DNA of 63,759 bases, the filler included, from Octopus bimaculoides (lineage: Eukaryota): the NCBI RefSeq assembly GCF_001194135.2. It is 8 parts of 8 records of this genome, joined end to end, with 100 filler letters (N's around TTAATTAATTAA, not from the genome) between each part and the next. Parts side by side here need not be neighbours in the genome. Positions count along the whole stretch, not along the records: positions 12,335 to 20,449 come from NC_068991.1; 7 more parts are not named here. The stretch is one strand, 5' to 3'. Shown one piece after another: positions 12,727-20,449 of this stretch; within the stretch, counting starts at the first letter, position 1; the number at the start of each line of letters is the position of its first letter. Both the position numbers and the translations under genes were made by a program. The notes below the pieces were generated by a model that saw nothing but the letters and a program-made list of their open reading frames with translations, searched no databases and was not told the origin of the DNA.

Positions 12727-13127
12727 CTTTTATCCTTCTATTTGTTTCAGTCTTTAGACAGAAGAAATTTTAGCCAAATAAATCGACTCTAGTACTTTTC
12801 TTTTTAAGCCAGGTACATTTTTATTTGGTCTCTTTTGCCGAGCTACTAAATTACGAGGACGTAAACACACCAACACCGGTTTTCAAGCGGTGGTGGGATG
12901 AAACACAGACACAAAGAAACACACACTCATATAGCCACACACACACACTCACACACACAAACACAGCGCGCGTGCACATACACACACAATTATATATATA
13001 TATATATATATATATACATAGGACGGTCTTCTTTCAGTTCCCATTTACCAAATCCACTCTGGAGGCTTTGGTCAACCCGAGGCTATAGTCAAAGACACCT
13101 GCCTAAGACGCCACGCAGCGGGACTGA
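12727..13127 (-). mobile_element. Composite SINE (tRNA/CORE-like head + microsatellite + GGTGTGTTTACGTCC tail)
   Basis: Head matches 28446-28590 and tail matches 22990-23200, both on the minus strand, separated by (CA)/(TA)n. Confidence 0.6.
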
Positions 13128-13646
13128 ACATGGAGTGTATTTATACTGTTTCTACAAAATATAGCAGCAACTTACCTTCAAATCACTCTACTGGATTAAA
13201 ACTAAAAGACGTATTAGAGAGATAATTACAGCCAGATTACTTTTGGCTTAGTTCTCTTCTGTCAGACTTCATTAGGATTTAAACAGCAATAAGCTGTAAA
13301 AGAACATTAAGAGCTTCCAGTCAGAGTAGATAGTATTCTCCATTGTCTGTATCAAGTGGCAGCTGCCTGAAAACATCAACGAGAGATTCGACCATGAATG
13401 GTTGGATAGCGTAGTAGAAAAGAGAAATAATAAAGACAGCAAACAATACACAATGGTATTGTGGAAAAGGTTTGCTTTGCTAGACGTAACAAAGCATGAA
13501 GGGCAGTGCATGGTAGACAAGTCAATGTATTTTACACGTCTCAAAACAGCTTATACGACTGACTACACTTGACCAAGAAAACTCCCTTTTAGAGAAAATA
13601 CAATAAACCTAATACATACACACACACGCACACACACACACACATA

Positions 13647-13733
<87 letters not shown>

Positions 13734-13781
13734 GTTCAGGACGAGAATTCCAAAAGTAAACACAACAAAAACACTGGGGTA

Positions 13782-14644
13782 TACGAAGTGGTGTCAAAAA
13801 GTTTAATAAAAAATAACTCATTTACCTAAGTTTTAACATCATCTTCTTCGAAATAGTCACCTTGCACAGCAATACACCGGTCCCAGCATTCCTGGTACTT
13901 TTGGAATCCGGCCTGAAAGTCGTTTTCTCTAAGCGAGTCGAGGACCTTCTGCAATTTGCTCTTAATCTCGACAACAGTGTTAAAGCGGTGACCTTTGAGC
14001 TGCATTTTCATCTTGGGGAAGAGATGGAAGTTCCCAAGTGCTAAATTTGGTGAATAAGGTAGGTGCAGAAGTGATACCATGTTGTTCTTGGCAAGAAGCT
14101 CACGAGTGAAGATAGCTCGGTGACAGGGTGCATCGTCGTCATAAAGAATCCAATTCTTCGCCCTCCACAGATCGGGTCGCTTTCGCCGAATGTCCTCCCT
14201 CAAACACTTCAAAATGTCATCGATTGTCCTCCGACAATCCTCATGCATAAGTTGATGAATATTTTCAACATTTCTGGCGATGATGCTTGTGGTAGGTCTT
14301 CCAGATCGCTCATCGTATTCCGGGGACGTTCTTCCGCTTTTAAAGCGCCCATGCCACTCGAAACATTACTTCGTCGCCGTTAGTTTGTCGAAGCATGCTC
14401 AATATCTCTGAATTAGGCATCCCAAGTTTAACGCAAAATTTCACGTTGGTTCTTTGTTCCAACTTTCCGTCCATGACAAAAATTGAAGAATACAGCATAC
14501 ACGTGATCACAAAAACACAAATTTCACAACTTGCGAATTGAACACAGCGATGTCACTCTTCATGAAGATCACTACTAGCGCTCACTGCTGCCATTTGTTG
14601 ACGCACTACAGAACTAGTCCGAGAACTTTTTGATACCACTTACA
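13782..14644 (-). mobile_element. Internally deleted mariner transposon
   Basis: ORF 13826-14248 carries WILYDDDAPCH, HLPYSPNLALGNFHLFPKMK and WDRCIAVQGDYFE. The N-terminus MDGKLEQRTNVKFCVKLG lies upstream. EDCRRTIDDI is fused directly to LKCLREDIRR, indicating a central deletion. TIRs AAGTGGTGTCAAAAAGTT and AACTTTTTGATACCACTT. Confidence 0.92.
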
Positions 14645-15305
14645 GTTGTGATGATGGTCAGTGCCCCAGCTGATGTAAATATCTCTCAAAGTTGTATACA
14701 AAGCAAATAAAAATAATATGTATGTGTGTGTGTGTGTATACATCATGTCTTGTATGAGTGTGTGTGGAATTGATCGTGGACATTATGCCAAGTATACGGC
14801 CACATTCATGCACGTTTTCCCCCTATTACAGAGCTATGAGGGAAAATATTTATATTGGGGATTGTATAAAGAAGAGTTCCAACTTGTGTCAATCAATCAG
14901 TAGGGCAACAGACACCCGGAAAACCTTTCAGAAGTTTCCTATTTCAGCCCACTGCTGCTACACACACACACGCACGCACGCACGCACACACACACACACA
15001 ATCACTCACATATATATACATGAGAGCAAATCTTCCTCAGATCACACAAACTACCGTTTAGGAAGTGGGAGATTACGTTAAAGAATATAGACTTTCATAT
15101 CATGAAAACAGTTAAGTATATCAACGTATACGCGCGCGCGCGCACATACACACTCACTCATTCACACACATATATACACACATATATACACACATATAAA
15201 CGTATTTATATATATGTAGATATACAAATGTCTATATATTTCTAGCCTTGTGAGTGTATTTGATAGATGGAAACTGAAAGAAGCCCGTTTTATATATATC
15301 TGTGC

Positions 15306-15352
<47 letters not shown>

Positions 15353-15362
15353 NNNNNNNNNN

Positions 15363-15406
<44 letters not shown>

Positions 15407-16339
15407 GTGTCTGTGTGATCTGTAAGATATACCTGTTTTTACAGATAAAATTGAAGACATACGCTTTTATAATAACCATACACCTATCCCCTCGTTTTAA
15501 AAACTAGACAAAATGACTTCAACGTTCGCTGGGCGAAAAACTGTAATCGATCTTAACCAATTTCTTTATTTGTTAGGCACTCATCAGAGAAATAATACCT
15601 ACCATGTAACTACAGAGAGATTACTATTTATGGGTATTTATAATGTATACCACCAAGGACTCAGCCAAAATAAGTAGCATAACGGCATATGAGCTGATGG
15701 GTTCATTGATAATAGTCTATAAACATGTTTGTACCTTCATACTCTATGATATATAGAGTAGTTATAATATAAAGAGTAGTTAATATTGTTAAAGAACTTA
15801 TTCAGTTTCTCGTTATGTGCAATTGTTTCGTCGCTTGAAACCCTGAGTAGCAATGGACTGAATCATCAAGTTAGATACGTGTGTGTGTTTGTGTGTATAT
15901 GTATAGATGTGTGAACGGATGAATAAACGGATAGCGCGAAAGGAGAGAGGAGAAAGAAAGAGTGCAAGAAAAAGGTAGAAAGGGGCGCAGGATGAGTGGG
16001 GAAGCAAATATTGGCAAGACAGCTGCCAAGTTAAATTCTTGTTGATGTCAGGTGGAAGTAGAAATTGGAGGGGAAACTTTGGAAAAATGACCCAAGATAT
16101 GTCTGCCATTATATCCCTTTCCACTTAAAGTATGGCGAGTTTCTAGTAATTTCTCTAAGAACTTGACCTGGCTATCGAATGTCCTTGCTGTATGAGTTTC
16201 TGGTTAGACTCTTGGGAATATTAATTCACATGGAATCAACTGAAGACATGTTGCTTTCTTTCTTTTTTCTTTTCTATTTTTTCTTTTTTATAGTTGTTGA
16301 GGTTTTTTATTTAGTTTTTAAAATAGATTGACTTCTATT

Positions 16340-16770
16340 TCGAAGTATTACTCCACCAAATTTCAGTACCACCATTAACACCGCCAAATCTTTAATACCA
16401 ATTCCTCTAGCACCACAATCACCACCAACAGCACCAACACCACCAACACCACCAACTACCACTACCATTACACCTGCCGCTACTACTACTATTACTACCG
16501 CCATCAATATTACCTCCACCAATATCACAATCACCCTCATTTCCACTGCCAGCACCATTAATGTTGCCACCAGCAATACCACTACCATCACCAATTCTAA
16601 ACCAGTATACCATCATAACCACTACATTATAAAACAACTACACCAATCAATACTGCTGCACAATTATTACTACTATCACCGTTACCACCATCTCCACCAT
16701 TACAACTACAAAATATCCAATACTATTACTTGTCGTCACTATGGCTAACACCACCACGACCACCATACCT
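16340..16770. repeat. Degenerate (ACC/ACT)n trinucleotide low-complexity tract
   Basis: Visible CAC/TAC/CAT periodicity; yields Val/Gly-rich spurious ORFs. Confidence 0.85.
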
Positions 16771-16911
16771 ACGCACGTACTACATACGCATACATACATA
16801 CACATATACATACACATCTGTATGCATACATGTGCATTCTTTCATATGCACATACACACATACGTACATAGAGATAGACCTATGTACATATACATGGCAA
16901 CATATATATAT

Positions 16912-16942
<31 letters not shown>

Positions 16943-18145
16943 NNNNNNNNNNNNNNNNNNNNNNNNNNNNNNNNNNNNNNNNNNNNNNNATATATATACA
17001 TATATATTCGCACACACATATGCATCCCCCGTATTAATATATTTGTTTAGAAAACAAGATTAACGGACAAACTCTCGATAGACCGACCGACAGACAGGCC
17101 GAGTGACAAACGGGTCGTCGGTGAAAACATTGGGATATTTCCGTTGGTCACTCTGCTTTAGCGATCTATAATCGTCGGTCAGTTGTCCAGATTTTATTTA
17201 ATCACCATTATATACTATCGCATTGTTGGCCAGCATTGACAGAATAATGAAAGTGGCGGCGGCGGAGAGAAACTGATGGGTGAAGAGGAGAAAAAGGAGG
17301 ACAGGAAGAGAAGGAAAAGAAAAGAGTGGGGGAGAAAACAGTTAAGAGATCAGGAGATAAAGTAATGATGGTGTCTAGAAGATGATGAATATATTCTTAA
17401 CATACTCCTCTGGTATGAAACGTTTCACACCATCTAAATGTCAACTTCTTTTTACGTTTTATTGGTAGCCATCTTTTCAGCTATAGCATTTTGTGGTCAA
17501 GAATTGAATTGAATTAAAGAGTTACTCTGCACAAAGTTAATCTTTCCAGGTCTTTGATTAGGGGTTACTTGGTAAAAACGAGTCCCATGGGATTCTTAGC
17601 TCACGTGAACAGGATACACACAAAACCAATATGGTCACTTAGAGGTCATCACTTGATGTAAGGTCTTTTAGAACATTCATTGATTTTCTCTCTCTCCCGC
17701 CTTCTCTCTCTTTCCCTCTCTCTCACACACACACACGCACAAATACGCACGCGCGCACATGTGCTCAACTGCAAGCACTCTGCCACTTTCCTTTCCCTGT
17801 GGTTGTTAAAATAAATGATAGTAATGAAAACTGCAACAGCAACATCATCATGGGCATGAATTACAGTTGTTGACACCTAGTGAATATCTTTTGGAAATTC
17901 TAGTGTGAACCAAAGACAAGGAATTGAAGGAGCATCCACAGGGCCACATAGGCAGCAAAGAATATCAACCAAATCTGAAGAAGCTCGTCCGGTGAATTTT
18001 ACCTTTGGTACAGCCTTGTCACCTGCAGTTTCTGCTTCTGAGAATTGCGTTAAGGATACATGCGCTTTGGAATATTCAACCATTTACACATTCGTTCAAT
18101 TTACTTGATGGAACAAGTGAAACCTCATCACCAACCCAGTGGAGA

Positions 18146-18194
<49 letters not shown>

Positions 18195-18908
18195 GTATGT
18201 GTGTGTACAGTCCATAGATTCTCCGTATAGAAAATACCAGCGCTCAAATGATTTGAACTTATACTTAAGTAGTCATCTTCTGAAAGTTTTCAGTGTTTGC
18301 TTTTTTTGTTTTGGTTTGCATGTATGTATATATATATATGCCATGATTAATCGCTGACCAAACATCATTCAATTTTTTTTCTCCGTGTTTTTCTCCTTGT
18401 TTTCTCCGTNNNNNNNNNNNNNNNNNNNNNNNNNNNNNNNNNNNNNNNNNNNNNNNNNNNNNNNNNNNNNNNNNNNNNNNNNNNNNNNNNNNNNNNNNNN
18501 NNNNNNNNNNNNNNNNNNNNNNNNNNNNNNNNNNNNNNNNNNNNNNNNNNNNNNNNNNNNNNNNNNNNNNNNNNNNNNNNNNNNNNNNNNNNNNNNNNNN
18601 NNNNNNNNNNNNNNNNNNNNNNNNNNNNNNNNNNNNNNNNNNNNNNNNNNNNNNNNNNNNNNNNNNNNNNNNNNNNNNNNNNNNNNNNNNNNNNNNNNNN
18701 NNNNNNNNNNNNNNNNNNNNNNNNNNNNNNNNNNNNNNNNNNNNNNNNNNNNNNNNNNNNNNNNNNNNNNNNNNNNNNNNNNNNNNNNNNNNNNNNNNNN
18801 NNNNNNNNNNNNNNNNNNNNNNNNNNNNNNNNNNNNNNNNNNNNNNNNNNNNNNNNNNNNNNNNNNNNNNNNNNNNNNNNNNNNNNNNNNNNNNNNNNNN
18901 NNNNNNNN

Positions 18909-18941
<33 letters not shown>

Positions 18942-19107
18942 AGTAAAGTTTATTTGCCAACATAATGTGACAGTCCTATACAAAGACGATGTTATTGTTT
19001 TTAAACCCCAGGAAAACGTCTTTTCCAGTTGGCTACCGACACACAGTTTGTGCCTATATAGCATATGCAAGGGAGATAATCACTTCCATCTTTAGCCTTA
19101 CGTGATA

Positions 19108-19152
19108 CTCACAGACCTAGGTTTCTGGGTAGTTACCCGTCCTCAGTGTGAG
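19108..19152 (-). ncRNA. Minimal type I hammerhead ribozyme, near-canonical
   Basis: Minus strand reads CTCACA-CTGAGGA-C-GGGTA-AC-TACCC-A-GAA-ACCTAGGT-C-TGTGAG: perfect 6-bp stem I, palindromic stem III, GUC triplet. The only defect is a C.A mismatch at 10.1/11.1. Confidence 0.85.
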
Positions 19153-19535
19153 ACAGTCACTGGCTAGTGATGGGACTCTCTCCACTTGCAAATACTATAT
19201 ATTGTTAAGCGACACACAGCCGCTGATCTCATAAAGAGAAAAACAACTTATTTTAAATCTCTGAGCGTGAGATATGCTCAGAATAGTAAAGTTTATTAGC
19301 CAACTTAAAAAGATGCATTCCTGGGGCTAAAAAGTAGTAACATCGTCCTTATATAGGTCTGCCACATTATGTTGGCAAATAAACTTTAATTTTCGATAGG
19401 GTTGCTAGAAATCTCTCGCTCAGAGAATTAAAACAAGTTGTCTTTCTCTTTACAAGATCAGCGATTGTGTGTCGCTTAAAAATATATATATAATATTTGC
19501 AAGTGGAGTGTGCCCTATCACTAACCGCTGATTGT

Positions 19536-19577
19536 CTCACACTGAGGACGTGCAACTACCGAAAAACCTAGGTCTGT
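19536..19577 (+). ncRNA. Degenerate hammerhead ribozyme copy
   Basis: CTCACA-CTGAGGA-CGTGCAACTACC-GAAAAACCTAGGT-C-TGT: two extra As, and damaged stems I and II. Confidence 0.55.
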
Positions 19578-19802
19578 ATCACGTAAGGCTAGAGATGGGA
19601 ACGATGACCTCCCTTGCATATACTATATGGGCACAAAATGTGTGTCGGTAGCCAACTGGAAAAGATGTTTTCCTGGGGCTAAAAACAGTAAACATCGCCC
19701 TTGTATAGGACTGCCACATTATGTTGGCAAATAAACTTTATTATTCCGTACTGTTACTGCATATCTCTCGCTCAGAGATTTAAAACAAGCTGTTTTTCTC
19801 TT

Positions 19803-19872
<70 letters not shown>

Positions 19873-19959
19873 CATATATGAGCATGTGTGTATGTGTGTA
19901 CATATATACATATATATGTATTACATATATACACATATATAAGTGTACAGGAGCACACT

Positions 19960-20195
19960 TGGCCCTTCCTGAGCCATAAGGACTCATAAGACCGGTTTCC
20001 TAGATTCTGTGATGTATATAGTTTCACAGTGGACTGGACGTCGATCTGTCGCAGGATTAGTCATTTTTGCCAGCTGAGTGGATTGGAGCAACGTGGTGTT
20101 TTGCTCAAGAACGCAACATATTGCTCGGTCCAGAATCGAAGCCACAATCTTATGATCATGAGCGCAACACCTTAACCATTTAGCTACGCGCCATC
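19960..20195 (-). mobile_element. tRNA-derived SINE (CTTGAGCAA domain family)
   Basis: Head GCGTAGCTAAATGG...GGCTTCGATTC on the minus strand. Central GTTCTTGAGCAAAA is shared with other copies. Confidence 0.7.
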
Positions 20196-20380
20196 ACGCA
20201 TGTACACATTCGCATGAACATTTATACGTACGTATGTACACATTGCAGAAGCAAATATCTTTCAAGGTTGTACTCAATATACTTTACATAAGCCAACTGT
20301 AGAGTTAATATGCATTTATTTATATAAATAATCACACAACAACCGTTTGGTTGAAACGGCTATAGCGTGACCGGTTATAT

Positions 20381-20449
<69 letters not shown>

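What the first reader, a model, noticed from the sequence alone, without database searches (positions are those of the whole stretch)
18941..19803. Retrozyme-like ~350-bp unit with a near-perfect minimal hammerhead, in tandem and inverted arrangement
Seen: a 343/352-bp unit, about 1 copy on minus then about 1.4 copies on plus, with no ORF and flanked by (TA)n and (TG)n. The minus copy carries CTCACA-CTGAGGA-stem II-GAA-ACCTAGGT-C-TGTGAG. Known: minimal type I HHRs with a palindromic stem III cleave as dimers. They mark both PLE pLTRs and small non-coding tandem 'non-LTR retrozymes' of a few hundred nt in metazoans, which yield circular RNAs. Inference: this is a cephalopod retrozyme-like family mobilised in trans by PLE machinery, whose multimeric transcripts self-process into ~350-nt monomers or circles.
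Basis: partly seen in the sequence, partly recalled or inferred. Interest (0 to 1): 0.88.

Follow-up and report, generated by a model that had tools for sequence, protein, structure and literature searches.

The report
Decayed hammerhead-ribozyme retroelement (retrozyme-like) insertion
A short non-coding repeat of about 350 bases that carries a self-cutting hammerhead RNA motif sits as one inverted plus 1.4 tandem copies inside a microsatellite of an octopus-like genome; it looks like an old, worn copy of an already known class of small mobile elements (animal "retrozymes"), so it is real but not a new kind of thing.

Summary
Bases 18941-19804 hold a 343/352-bp non-coding unit. There are 1.04 copies on the minus strand (19296 to 18941) and, head-to-head with them, 1.44 copies on the plus strand (19297 to 19804). 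The copies are about 86% identical and lie between (TA)n and (TG)n.

The minus copy carries a complete type I hammerhead at 19108-19152. It has an intact core, a 6-bp helix I and a 4-bp helix II. Helix III is a 2-bp stem with a tetraloop, which together form the 8-nt palindrome ACCUAGGU. Chance is excluded.

Rfam does not recognise the motif. A covariance model built only from four published, self-cleaving retrozyme hammerheads finds it at 26.6 bits (E about 2e-6). The background in the piece is at most 10 bits.

The plus copy's ribozyme is dead, so this locus cannot release a unit-length RNA or a circle.

A short tandem plus an inverted copy in a microsatellite is the insertion signature of Penelope-like-element machinery. 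No RT or endonuclease ORF is attached.

The best reading is a decayed insertion of a non-LTR-retrozyme-type element. I could not test copy number, conservation across the family, a link to Penelope terminal repeats, or expression, because no cephalopod genome was searchable. This is a new member of a known kind, of modest interest.

The parts
18909..18940 (.). (TA)n microsatellite on the left flank. It is directly preceded by a 499-N assembly gap (18410-18908).
18941..19296 (-). Full unit copy in the ribozyme sense, 356 nt (1.04 units of 343). Its 3' end lies at 18941 next to (TA)n. Its 5' end lies at 19296, head-to-head with the plus array.
   Evidence: (I1, I2, I3, I11)
19108..19152 (-). Intact type I hammerhead: CUCACA / CUGAGGA / C-GGGU-AACU-ACCC-A / GAA / A-C-CUAG-G-U / C | UGUGAG. 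The predicted cut lies between 19114 and 19113. A possible distal helix I (GUGA/UCAC) beyond a CUGU/UA internal loop extends the motif to 19102-19160.
   Evidence: 26.6 bits, E about 2e-6 with model R1
19297..19648 (+). First plus-strand unit, 352 nt. It has a 9-nt and a 4-nt insertion relative to the minus copy.
   Evidence: (D10)
19539..19577 (+). Decayed hammerhead of the plus unit. CUGAGGA and the palindrome CCUAGG are kept. In the homologous register G12 has become A, helix II is broken, and 4 nt are deleted from the 3' strand of helix I.
   Evidence: 7.5 bits, E = 1.2
19649..19804 (+). Second, partial plus-strand unit (156 nt). It stops before its hammerhead and ends at ...CTCTTTATA next to (TG)n.
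   Evidence: D10, 84% without gaps; 86.5%
19805..19869 (.). (TG)n microsatellite on the right flank.

Best explanation
This is an old insertion of a short (about 345-350 nt), non-coding retroelement that carries a hammerhead ribozyme. It belongs to the type called non-LTR retrozymes in animals, which current work regards as non-autonomous derivatives of Penelope-like elements (PLEs).

Shown here:
- The unit, its 1.04 inverted plus 1.44 tandem copies, and its position between (TA)n and (TG)n.
- One complete type I hammerhead whose architecture matches experimentally active retrozyme ribozymes.
- A strongly self-paired predicted monomer RNA for the copy that keeps the ribozyme.
- No coding capacity.

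Inferred mechanism for the family:
1. Read-through transcripts of tandem copies are cut 3' of C17 by the hammerhead.
2. Cutting most likely works best when two units pair their ACCUAGGU segments into a double hammerhead. The computed double-hammerhead fold of two 59-nt segments is -38.6 kcal/mol, against -33.6 for two separate monomer folds. A 2-bp/tetraloop helix III like this one also cleaves slowly as a monomer in the mussel element.
3. Unit-length RNAs are ligated into circles by a host ligase.
4. The circles or multimers are copied by the RT/GIY-YIG endonuclease of an autonomous Penelope element by target-primed reverse transcription at a nicked microsatellite. This gives a partial tandem plus a head-to-head inverted copy.

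This particular locus is dead. The copies differ by about 14%, which would mean roughly 20 My if they were identical at insertion. Only one ribozyme is intact, and no two ribozymes lie in the same orientation, so the locus cannot release a unit-length RNA.
For: - Repeat anatomy and flanks.
- Hammerhead core and helices, with chance excluded.
- Model R1 was built only from the coral, mussel and two axolotl retrozyme ribozymes printed in the supplement of PMC7229834. It finds 19108-19152(-) full-length at 26.6 bits, E about 2e-6. The next best hit in the piece scores 10.1 bits, and the maximum in 40 kb of Octopus sinensis control DNA is 10.2 bits.
- Those published ribozymes share the same plan: a 6-bp helix I, a 4-bp helix II, and GAAA followed by a 4-8 nt palindrome and UC or UA. 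One has CUGAGGA. One has a mismatch at the base of helix II (PMC7229834).
- Double-hammerhead energy.
- Circular monomer fold of the minus copy: -106.5 kcal/mol against -77.5 +/- 5.2 for shuffles, z = -5.5.
- GC is 39-40% and there is no ORF. Unit size lies within the 150-450 bp range, and mussel units are 350-390 bp (PMC7229834).
- PLE insertions typically form partial tandems with an adjacent inverted 5'-truncated copy, and they prefer microsatellites (PMC8557442). Paired hammerheads 100-700 bp apart on opposite strands are reported for PLE-related copies (PMC4209133).
- Retrozymes are related to PLE terminal repeats (bioRxiv 10.64898/2026.07.22.740005).
- Penelope families are present and recently active in Octopus vulgaris (PMC13282606).
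- No RT or GIY-YIG domain was found in the 1.4 kb left of the gap, and no long ORF occurs anywhere nearby.
Against: - Only one locus with three decayed copies was available, so family status, copy number and conservation or covariation of the ribozyme are untested.
- The second ribozyme copy is broken.
- Between the two copies, 21 of 109 scorable (113 predicted) pairs of the monomer fold are broken and only one change is compensatory. This gives no evidence of selection on the fold.
- The plus copy folds no better than shuffles (z = -1.6).
- Rfam's Hammerhead_1 model gives no hit even at E <= 10 on 91 bases.
- The C10.1/A11.1 mismatch may weaken or abolish cleavage.
- The tandem is only 1.44 units.
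- The 499-N gap hides what lies left of the (TA)n.
- No related copy was found in the rest of the piece or in 40 kb of Octopus sinensis.
Confidence: 0.68

Rival explanations
1. It is not a separate non-coding family. It is the terminal repeat (pLTR) region of an autonomous Penelope-like element: a heavily 5'-truncated insertion plus its usual inverted partner.
For: PLE pLTRs carry hammerheads. PLE insertions show inverted 5'-truncated copies and target microsatellites (PMC8557442). Most PLE hammerheads occur as isolated remnants, sometimes as pairs on opposite strands 100-700 bp apart (PMC4209133). The 499-N gap could hide more sequence.
Against: The tandem period is 352 bp with no ORF between the repeats, whereas a full PLE would give a period of several kb. 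The ribozyme has the canonical retrozyme plan (helix I 6 bp, helix II 4 bp, helix III 2 bp plus tetraloop). It does not have the PLE min-HHR plan of a long helix II, a short helix I and no helix III (PMC4209133; model R1). No RT or GIY-YIG signal was found in the flanks. The element ends in (TA)n before the gap.
Confidence: 0.15
2. It is a satellite-like tandem repeat amplified and rearranged at the DNA level by unequal exchange or inversion. The hammerhead is a relic with no role in its spread.
For: Hammerhead-bearing repeats were first described as satellite DNA in newts (PMC7229834). The locus lies in a region very rich in microsatellites.
Against: Only 2.5 units are present, bounded sharply by two different microsatellites. 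The head-to-head layout with both 3' ends pointing outward fits two priming events of reverse transcription better than unequal crossing-over. Such 'satellites' are now themselves classed as retrozymes (PMC7229834).
Confidence: 0.08
3. The inverted/tandem arrangement is an assembly artefact of a short-read scaffold. The real locus is a simple array or a single copy.
For: Three N gaps lie in the piece, and one of 499 N is directly adjacent. PLE-type structures are known to confuse short-read assemblies (PMC8557442).
Against: The three copies differ from each other by about 14% and by indels, so they are distinct sequences and not one collapsed or duplicated read set. The junctions lie within contiguous sequence.
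Confidence: 0.05
4. The hammerhead-like string is a chance match in an ordinary repeat.
For: Rfam finds no hammerhead. The minimum-free-energy fold of the isolated segment is not the hammerhead fold.
Against: No comparable match occurred in 20 Mb of random sequence. The motif scores 26.6 bits against a background of at most 10 bits with a model built from independent active ribozymes. The homologous position in the second copy keeps CUGAGGA and the palindrome.
Confidence: 0.02

Closest known systems
Metazoan non-LTR retrozymes (Cervera and de la Pena 2020, PMC7229834), for example the Mytilus galloprovincialis 350-390 bp element and the axolotl Rtz330/Rtz353 elements
   Same: The unit is non-coding, about 350 bp, in tandem, with GC below 45%. 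The type I hammerhead has a 6-bp helix I, a 4-bp helix II and GAAA followed by a short palindrome and UC. The mussel palindrome ACGCGCGU and the palindrome here, ACCUAGGU, are both 8 nt. The monomer is predicted to be strongly self-paired.
   Different: There is no detectable sequence similarity outside the ribozyme core. Only 1.44 tandem units are present, plus an inverted copy. Only one ribozyme is intact, and it has a C/A mismatch at the base of helix II. The loop nucleotides for the loop 1-loop 2 contact were not verified. Expression and circularity are unknown.
Penelope-like elements and their pLTR min-HHRs (Cervera and de la Pena 2014, PMC4209133; Craig et al. 2021, PMC8557442)
   Same: The insertion architecture is shared: a partial tandem, an adjacent head-to-head inverted copy and a microsatellite target. 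Hammerheads lie on opposite strands a few hundred bp apart. The palindromic helix III suggests action as a dimer.
   Different: There is no RT/GIY-YIG ORF, and the period is 352 bp rather than kilobases. The ribozyme has canonical helix sizes and does not follow the min-HHR plan.
Newt satellite 2 and Schistosoma Sm-alpha hammerhead repeats
   Same: These are also tandem repeats of about 330 bp with a type I hammerhead and a weak, palindromic helix III. The double-hammerhead model comes from them.
   Different: They come from a different phylum, have unrelated sequences, and form long arrays rather than a 2.5-unit insertion. Rfam's Hammerhead_1, which I recall from memory (not checked here) as covering repeats of this kind, does not recognise the motif here.
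Plant LTR retrozymes (Cervera et al. 2016, PMC4918200)
   Same: They are non-autonomous retroelements bounded by hammerheads that yield circular RNAs.
   Different: Plant elements have type III hammerheads, LTRs, a primer-binding site and polypurine tract, GC above 55%, a size of about 700 nt, and are mobilised by Gypsy elements.

Membership tests
Hammerhead ribozyme, type I | Conserved catalytic core: C3-U4-G5-A6-N7-G8-A9, G12-A13-A14, the A15.1-U16.1 pair, and H17 at the cut site | tested here: met
   The minus strand at 19108-19152 reads CUGAGGA ... GAA-A ... U-C. The plus copy has lost G12 in the homologous register.
Hammerhead ribozyme, type I | Three helices around the core, with helix I open | tested here: met
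   Helix I is 6 bp (CUCACA/UGUGAG). Helix II is 4 bp (GGGU/ACCC) with a C10.1/A11.1 mismatch at its base. Helix III is A-U and C-G plus a CUAG loop, which together form the 8-nt palindrome. The hammerhead fold is not the minimum-energy fold of the monomer (-11.6 against -16.8). The double-hammerhead fold is near the dimer minimum (-38.6 against -40.2).
Hammerhead ribozyme, type I | Match to the curated Rfam model Hammerhead_1 (RF00163) | tested here: not met
   No hammerhead family was reported at E <= 10 on the piece, on 863 bases or on 91 bases.
Hammerhead ribozyme, type I | Match to experimentally self-cleaving retrozyme hammerheads | tested here: met
   Model R1, built from four published ribozymes only, gives 26.6 bits, E about 2e-6, over the full model length. 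Background is at most 10.2 bits.
Hammerhead ribozyme, type I | Self-cleavage at the predicted site | not testable with these tools
   This needs in vitro transcription of monomer and dimer constructs.
Hammerhead ribozyme, type I | Conservation or covariation of the helices across related copies | tested here: inconclusive
   Only two copies cover the motif, and the second is decayed.
Metazoan non-LTR retrozyme | Short tandem repeats of 150-450 bp, each with a type I hammerhead | tested here: inconclusive
   The unit is 343/352 bp. Only 1.44 units lie in tandem, plus 1.04 inverted. One of the two ribozyme positions is intact.
Metazoan non-LTR retrozyme | Non-coding, low GC (below 45-50%), no LTR, PBS or PPT | tested here: met
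   GC is 0.39-0.40 and the longest open frame is 62 aa. No terminal direct repeats occur other than the tandem itself. PBS and PPT were not specifically searched.
Metazoan non-LTR retrozyme | Monomer RNA highly self-paired | tested here: inconclusive
   The minus-copy circular fold gives z = -5.5 with 66% of bases paired. The plus copy gives z = -1.6. There is no covariation support.
Metazoan non-LTR retrozyme | Multi-copy family dispersed in the genome | not testable with these tools
   No cephalopod genome collection was available. No copy was found in the rest of the piece or in 40 kb of O. sinensis. Pattern scans of metagenome, prokaryote and viral collections gave nothing or random hits. 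The six-frame protein search gave nothing.
Metazoan non-LTR retrozyme | Expressed as unit-length linear and circular RNA | not testable with these tools
   This needs Northern blots, divergent-primer RT-PCR or RNase R treatment. This locus itself lacks two same-sense ribozymes.
Penelope-like element (autonomous) / ordinary pLTR | RT plus GIY-YIG ORF between the terminal repeats | tested here: not met
   No ORF occurs in or next to the array. No Pfam domain was found in six frames of 16990-18409. The inside of the 499-N gap is unknown.
Penelope-like element (autonomous) / ordinary pLTR | min-HHR plan: helix II 6-8 bp, helix I 4-5 bp, no helix III nucleotides | tested here: not met
   Helix II is 4 bp, helix I is 6 bp, and a 6-nt palindrome lies between A15.1 and U16.1 (definition from PMC4209133).
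PLE-type integration (machinery used, not family membership) | Partial tandem plus adjacent inverted 5'-truncated copy, inserted in a microsatellite | tested here: met
   The head-to-head junction is at 19296/19297, and the 3' ends lie at (TA)n and (TG)n. The description comes from PMC8557442.

The most novel reading that the evidence does not exclude
Octopods carry a still-active non-LTR retrozyme family, which I did not find reported for cephalopods in the literature I could search. Its circular RNAs of about 345 nt are abundantly expressed. Its characteristic inverted insertions, like this one with a predicted hairpin of about 320 bp, also feed long double-stranded RNA into the ADAR-editing or small-RNA pathways of cephalopods.
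Probability: 0.12. Interest if true: 0.55.

Novelty: new member of a known kind. Interest (0 to 1): 0.33.

Why it matters
If the family is confirmed genome-wide, it would extend hammerhead-bearing retrozymes to cephalopods. It would also give a clean example in which a retrozyme-type ribozyme sits in an insertion with the structural signature of Penelope-type integration: an inverted copy plus a partial tandem in a microsatellite. That supports the recent proposal that animal retrozymes are non-autonomous partners of PLEs. For genome annotation, it flags a repeat that standard Rfam scanning misses. It does not open a new question by itself, because the class, its ribozyme, its circular RNAs and its link to PLEs are already described.

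Tried and rejected
1. Rfam at permissive thresholds on the piece, on the 863-bp finding and on 91 bases gave no hammerhead. The only hits were microsatellite-driven miRNA look-alikes.
2. Looking for other copies:
   - An exact 22-mer from the best-conserved block gave nothing in the metagenome, prokaryote-genome and viral collections.
   - A core-plus-palindrome pattern gave 6 + 6 prokaryotic hits without helices or similarity, consistent with chance, and 0 viral hits.
3. A concatenated six-frame translation of the array, searched against 5.8 billion proteins to catch ORFs called on other copies, produced 4439 word candidates but none with E <= 1.
4. Exact look-up of two window ORFs found nothing on record.
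5. The mariner remnant was used to reach related genomic DNA.
   - Two Octopus sinensis loci (40 kb) share three repeat families with the piece but not the unit.
   - JGI, ENA and Logan contigs share only the mariner.
6. I ran no further search on a from-memory PLE consensus. The chance of reaching octopus PLEs specifically was low.
7. I looked for covariation between the two copies in the monomer fold. It was not informative.
8. Similarity to the mussel retrozyme was no better than chance.
9. I considered and rejected a MITE or foldback reading. The right arm continues 64 nt past the inverted repeat as a tandem repeat of 19389-19452 (D10).

Full report
**What is in the sequence**

The usable piece runs from 12335 to 20449 and contains three assembly gaps: 15353-15362, 16943-16989 and 18410-18908. 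Right after the last gap come 31 bases of (TA)n (18909-18939).

Repeat finding and alignment give this anatomy:
- **Minus copy.** One copy lies on the minus strand, read 19296 to 18941. It is 356 nt, or 1.04 units of 343, and both ends read ATAAACTTTACT.
- **Plus array.** Head-to-head with the minus copy is a plus-strand array from 19297 to 19804. It has a 352-nt unit plus a 156-nt partial unit (direct repeat 19297-19452 against 19649-19804).
- **Flanks.** The two 3' ends point outward, to (TA)n on the left and to (TG)31 (19807-19869) on the right.
- **Divergence.** Copies are 86.3% and 86.5% identical, with a few indels and a 38:22 transition:transversion ratio.
- **Composition.** GC is 39-40%. 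No frame stays open for more than 62 codons.

One caveat is that the sequence left of the (TA)n is unknown.

**The hammerhead**

On the minus strand, 19108-19152 reads:

CUCACA-CUGAGGA-C-GGGU-AACU-ACCC-A-GAA-A-C-CUAG-G-U-C|UGUGAG

- All eleven invariant core positions are present.
- Helix I has 6 bp.
- Helix II has 4 bp, with a C/A mismatch at its base (positions 10.1/11.1).
- Helix III is A-U and C-G closed by CUAG. Together these make the 8-nt palindrome ACCUAGGU.
- Beyond a CUGU/UA internal loop, four more pairs (GUGA/UCAC) could extend helix I to 19102-19160.

Chance is not a credible explanation. In 20 Mb of random sequence with the piece's dinucleotide make-up, the core alone matched 266 times. 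None of those matches had even a 4-bp helix I together with a 3-bp helix II.

As an isolated 59-mer, the hammerhead fold (-11.6 kcal/mol) is not the minimum-energy fold (-16.8). The nested double hammerhead formed by two such segments is -38.6 kcal/mol. That is close to the dimer minimum (-40.2) and better than two separate monomers (-33.6). This fits the classical dimer model.

**Is it a hammerhead of the known retrozyme kind?**

Rfam gives no hammerhead hit, even at E <= 10 on a 91-base slice. I record that as a failed test.

The supplement of Cervera and de la Pena 2020 (PMC7229834) prints four genomic retrozyme constructs whose ribozymes were shown to cleave: coral Amil224, mussel Mg353, and axolotl Ax353 and Ax330. 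All four share the plan seen here:
- a 6-bp helix I;
- a 4-bp helix II with a 5-6 nt loop;
- GAAA, then a 4-8 nt palindrome, then UC or UA.

The mussel palindrome is ACGCGCGU. Ax330 has CUGAGGA. Ax353 has a U/U mismatch at the base of helix II.

I built a covariance model from those four sequences only and searched the whole piece without filters:
- The motif at 19108-19152(-) is the top hit at 26.6 bits, E about 2e-6, over the full model length.
- Every other hit scores 10.1 bits or less.
- The homologous site in the plus copy (19539-19577) scores 7.5 bits.
- Forty kb of Octopus sinensis DNA used as a control peaks at 10.2 bits.

So the ribozyme belongs, by architecture, with the canonical type I hammerheads of retrozymes. 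It does not belong with the 'minimal' hammerheads of PLE terminal repeats, which have a long helix II, a short helix I and no helix III nucleotides (PMC4209133).

**State of this locus**

The plus-strand ribozyme is dead. In the homologous register G12 is A, helix II no longer pairs, and four bases of the 3' strand of helix I are deleted. The second plus unit ends before its ribozyme. The minus strand has a single ribozyme.

No transcript of this locus therefore contains two working, same-sense ribozymes, so the locus cannot release a unit-length RNA or a circle.

A read-through RNA of either strand is predicted to fold into an imperfect hairpin of about 320 bp (-505 and -524 kcal/mol). That hairpin would also sequester the ribozyme.

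If the three copies were identical when inserted, 14% pairwise divergence (Jukes-Cantor about 0.15, or 0.075 per copy) corresponds to roughly 20 million years. This uses the scale given for octopus repeats, 0.09 for about 25 My (PMC13282606). It is an inference, not a measurement.

**The unit as an RNA**

Circularly permuted at the cut site, the 343-nt minus-copy monomer folds to -106.5 kcal/mol. Dinucleotide shuffles give -77.5 +/- 5.2 (z = -5.5), and 66% of bases are paired. Retrozyme circles are described as highly self-paired (PMC7229834).

The evidence is one-sided, however:
- The plus copy gives z = -1.6.
- Between the two copies, 21 of 109 scorable (113 predicted) pairs are broken and only one change is compensatory.

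**How it got there**

The layout is a partial tandem with an adjacent inverted copy meeting it 5' end to 5' end. It is bounded by microsatellites and has no recognisable target duplication. This is what Craig et al. 2021 describe for PLE insertions, including the preference for (TA)n and (CA)n targets (PMC8557442). Cervera and de la Pena 2014 also noted pairs of hammerheads 100-700 bp apart on opposite strands. Here the two sites are about 430 bp apart.

The piece contains several compound (CA/TG)n(TA)n microsatellites. A plausible target was one such tract, split by the insertion.

No RT or GIY-YIG coding sequence is attached:
- There is no ORF in or next to the array.
- There is no Pfam domain in six frames of the 1.4 kb left of the gap.
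- A SINE-like element lies on the right.

Penelope elements are present and recently active in Octopus vulgaris (30 families, PMC13282606). [quoted passage not shown] Mobilisation in trans by a PLE is therefore the most economical mechanism, but here it rests on architecture and literature only.

**Which organism**

The piece's mariner remnant, a repeat at 12769-13129 and the SINE-like element at 19961-20227 all match two Octopus sinensis chromosome loci at 70-80% identity. Metagenome and Logan contigs that encode related mariner transposases share nothing else with the piece. An octopod, or at least cephalopod, source is plausible but not proven.

**What could not be done**

No cephalopod genome collection was searchable. 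These attempts all failed to find another copy:
- pattern scans;
- a six-frame protein search;
- exact protein look-ups;
- 40 kb of octopus DNA.

As a result, copy number, family consensus, conservation of the ribozyme, relation to octopus PLE termini, and expression remain open.

**Comparison with what is known, and verdict**

The class has been described since 2020 for cnidarians, molluscs (mussel units of 350-390 bp), amphibians and 'many other invertebrate genomes'. Its defining features are non-coding tandem units of 150-450 bp, low GC, a type I hammerhead, circular RNA products, and co-occurrence with PLEs.

Rfam-based annotation of the giant squid genome lists 235 Hammerhead_1 loci (PMC6962438), so hammerheads in cephalopods are not new either. 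I found no paper that describes a cephalopod retrozyme, but my search was limited.

The unit has no sequence similarity to the mussel element, as expected for these species-specific families.

I file the finding as a real feature and a new member of a known kind, represented here by a decayed, non-functional insertion.
- Confidence that a genuine hammerhead-bearing repeat is present is high, about 0.95.
- Confidence that it is a retrozyme-type, PLE-mobilised non-autonomous element is about 0.68.

Noticed in passing
window 19961-20227, minus strand: A SINE-like element with a tRNA-like head carrying A-box-like (TAGCTAAATGG) and B-box-like (GCTTCGATTCT) motifs. It matches Octopus sinensis locus L001 1730-2006 at 73%. 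ARAGORN calls no tRNA here.
   Followed up: partly
window 13826-14248 (minus), with a likely upstream part at 14340-14510: A mariner/Tc1-type transposase remnant (140-aa open frame, DDE_3/Transposase_1 relatives). The best DNA match is an Octopus sinensis copy at 79%. The best protein matches (65%) come from JGI metagenome contigs annotated as SETMAR.
   Followed up: partly
window 12769-13129: An unclassified interspersed repeat present at least four times in the 20-kb Octopus sinensis locus L002, at 70-78% identity.
   Followed up: no
window 15353-15362, 16943-16989, 18410-18908: Three runs of N (10, 47 and 499 bases), each next to a microsatellite. The piece is a gapped scaffold, and the largest gap touches the finding's left flank.
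   Followed up: yes
window 12660-13030, 13610-13730, 15110-15345, 16780-17020, 19830-19960: Many sub-threshold Rfam 'miRNA' matches (mir-297, mir-3149, mir-466 and others) fall on (TG)n/(TA)n compound microsatellites. They are low-complexity artefacts, not genes.
   Followed up: yes
window 16350-16780: A strongly C-rich, skewed low-complexity tract (CACCACCAA-type 9-mer and 24-mer repeats; GC skew -0.77). Its nature is unknown.
   Followed up: no
window 18941-19804, both strands: A read-through transcript of the inverted/tandem array is predicted to form an imperfect double-stranded hairpin of about 320 bp. Such a hairpin is a potential substrate for RNA editing or small-RNA pathways.
   Followed up: partly
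window 15549-15587, minus strand: A hammerhead core-only string (CTGATGA...GAAA...TC) with no supporting helices. It scores 10.1 bits with model R1 and serves as an example of the chance background.
   Followed up: yes
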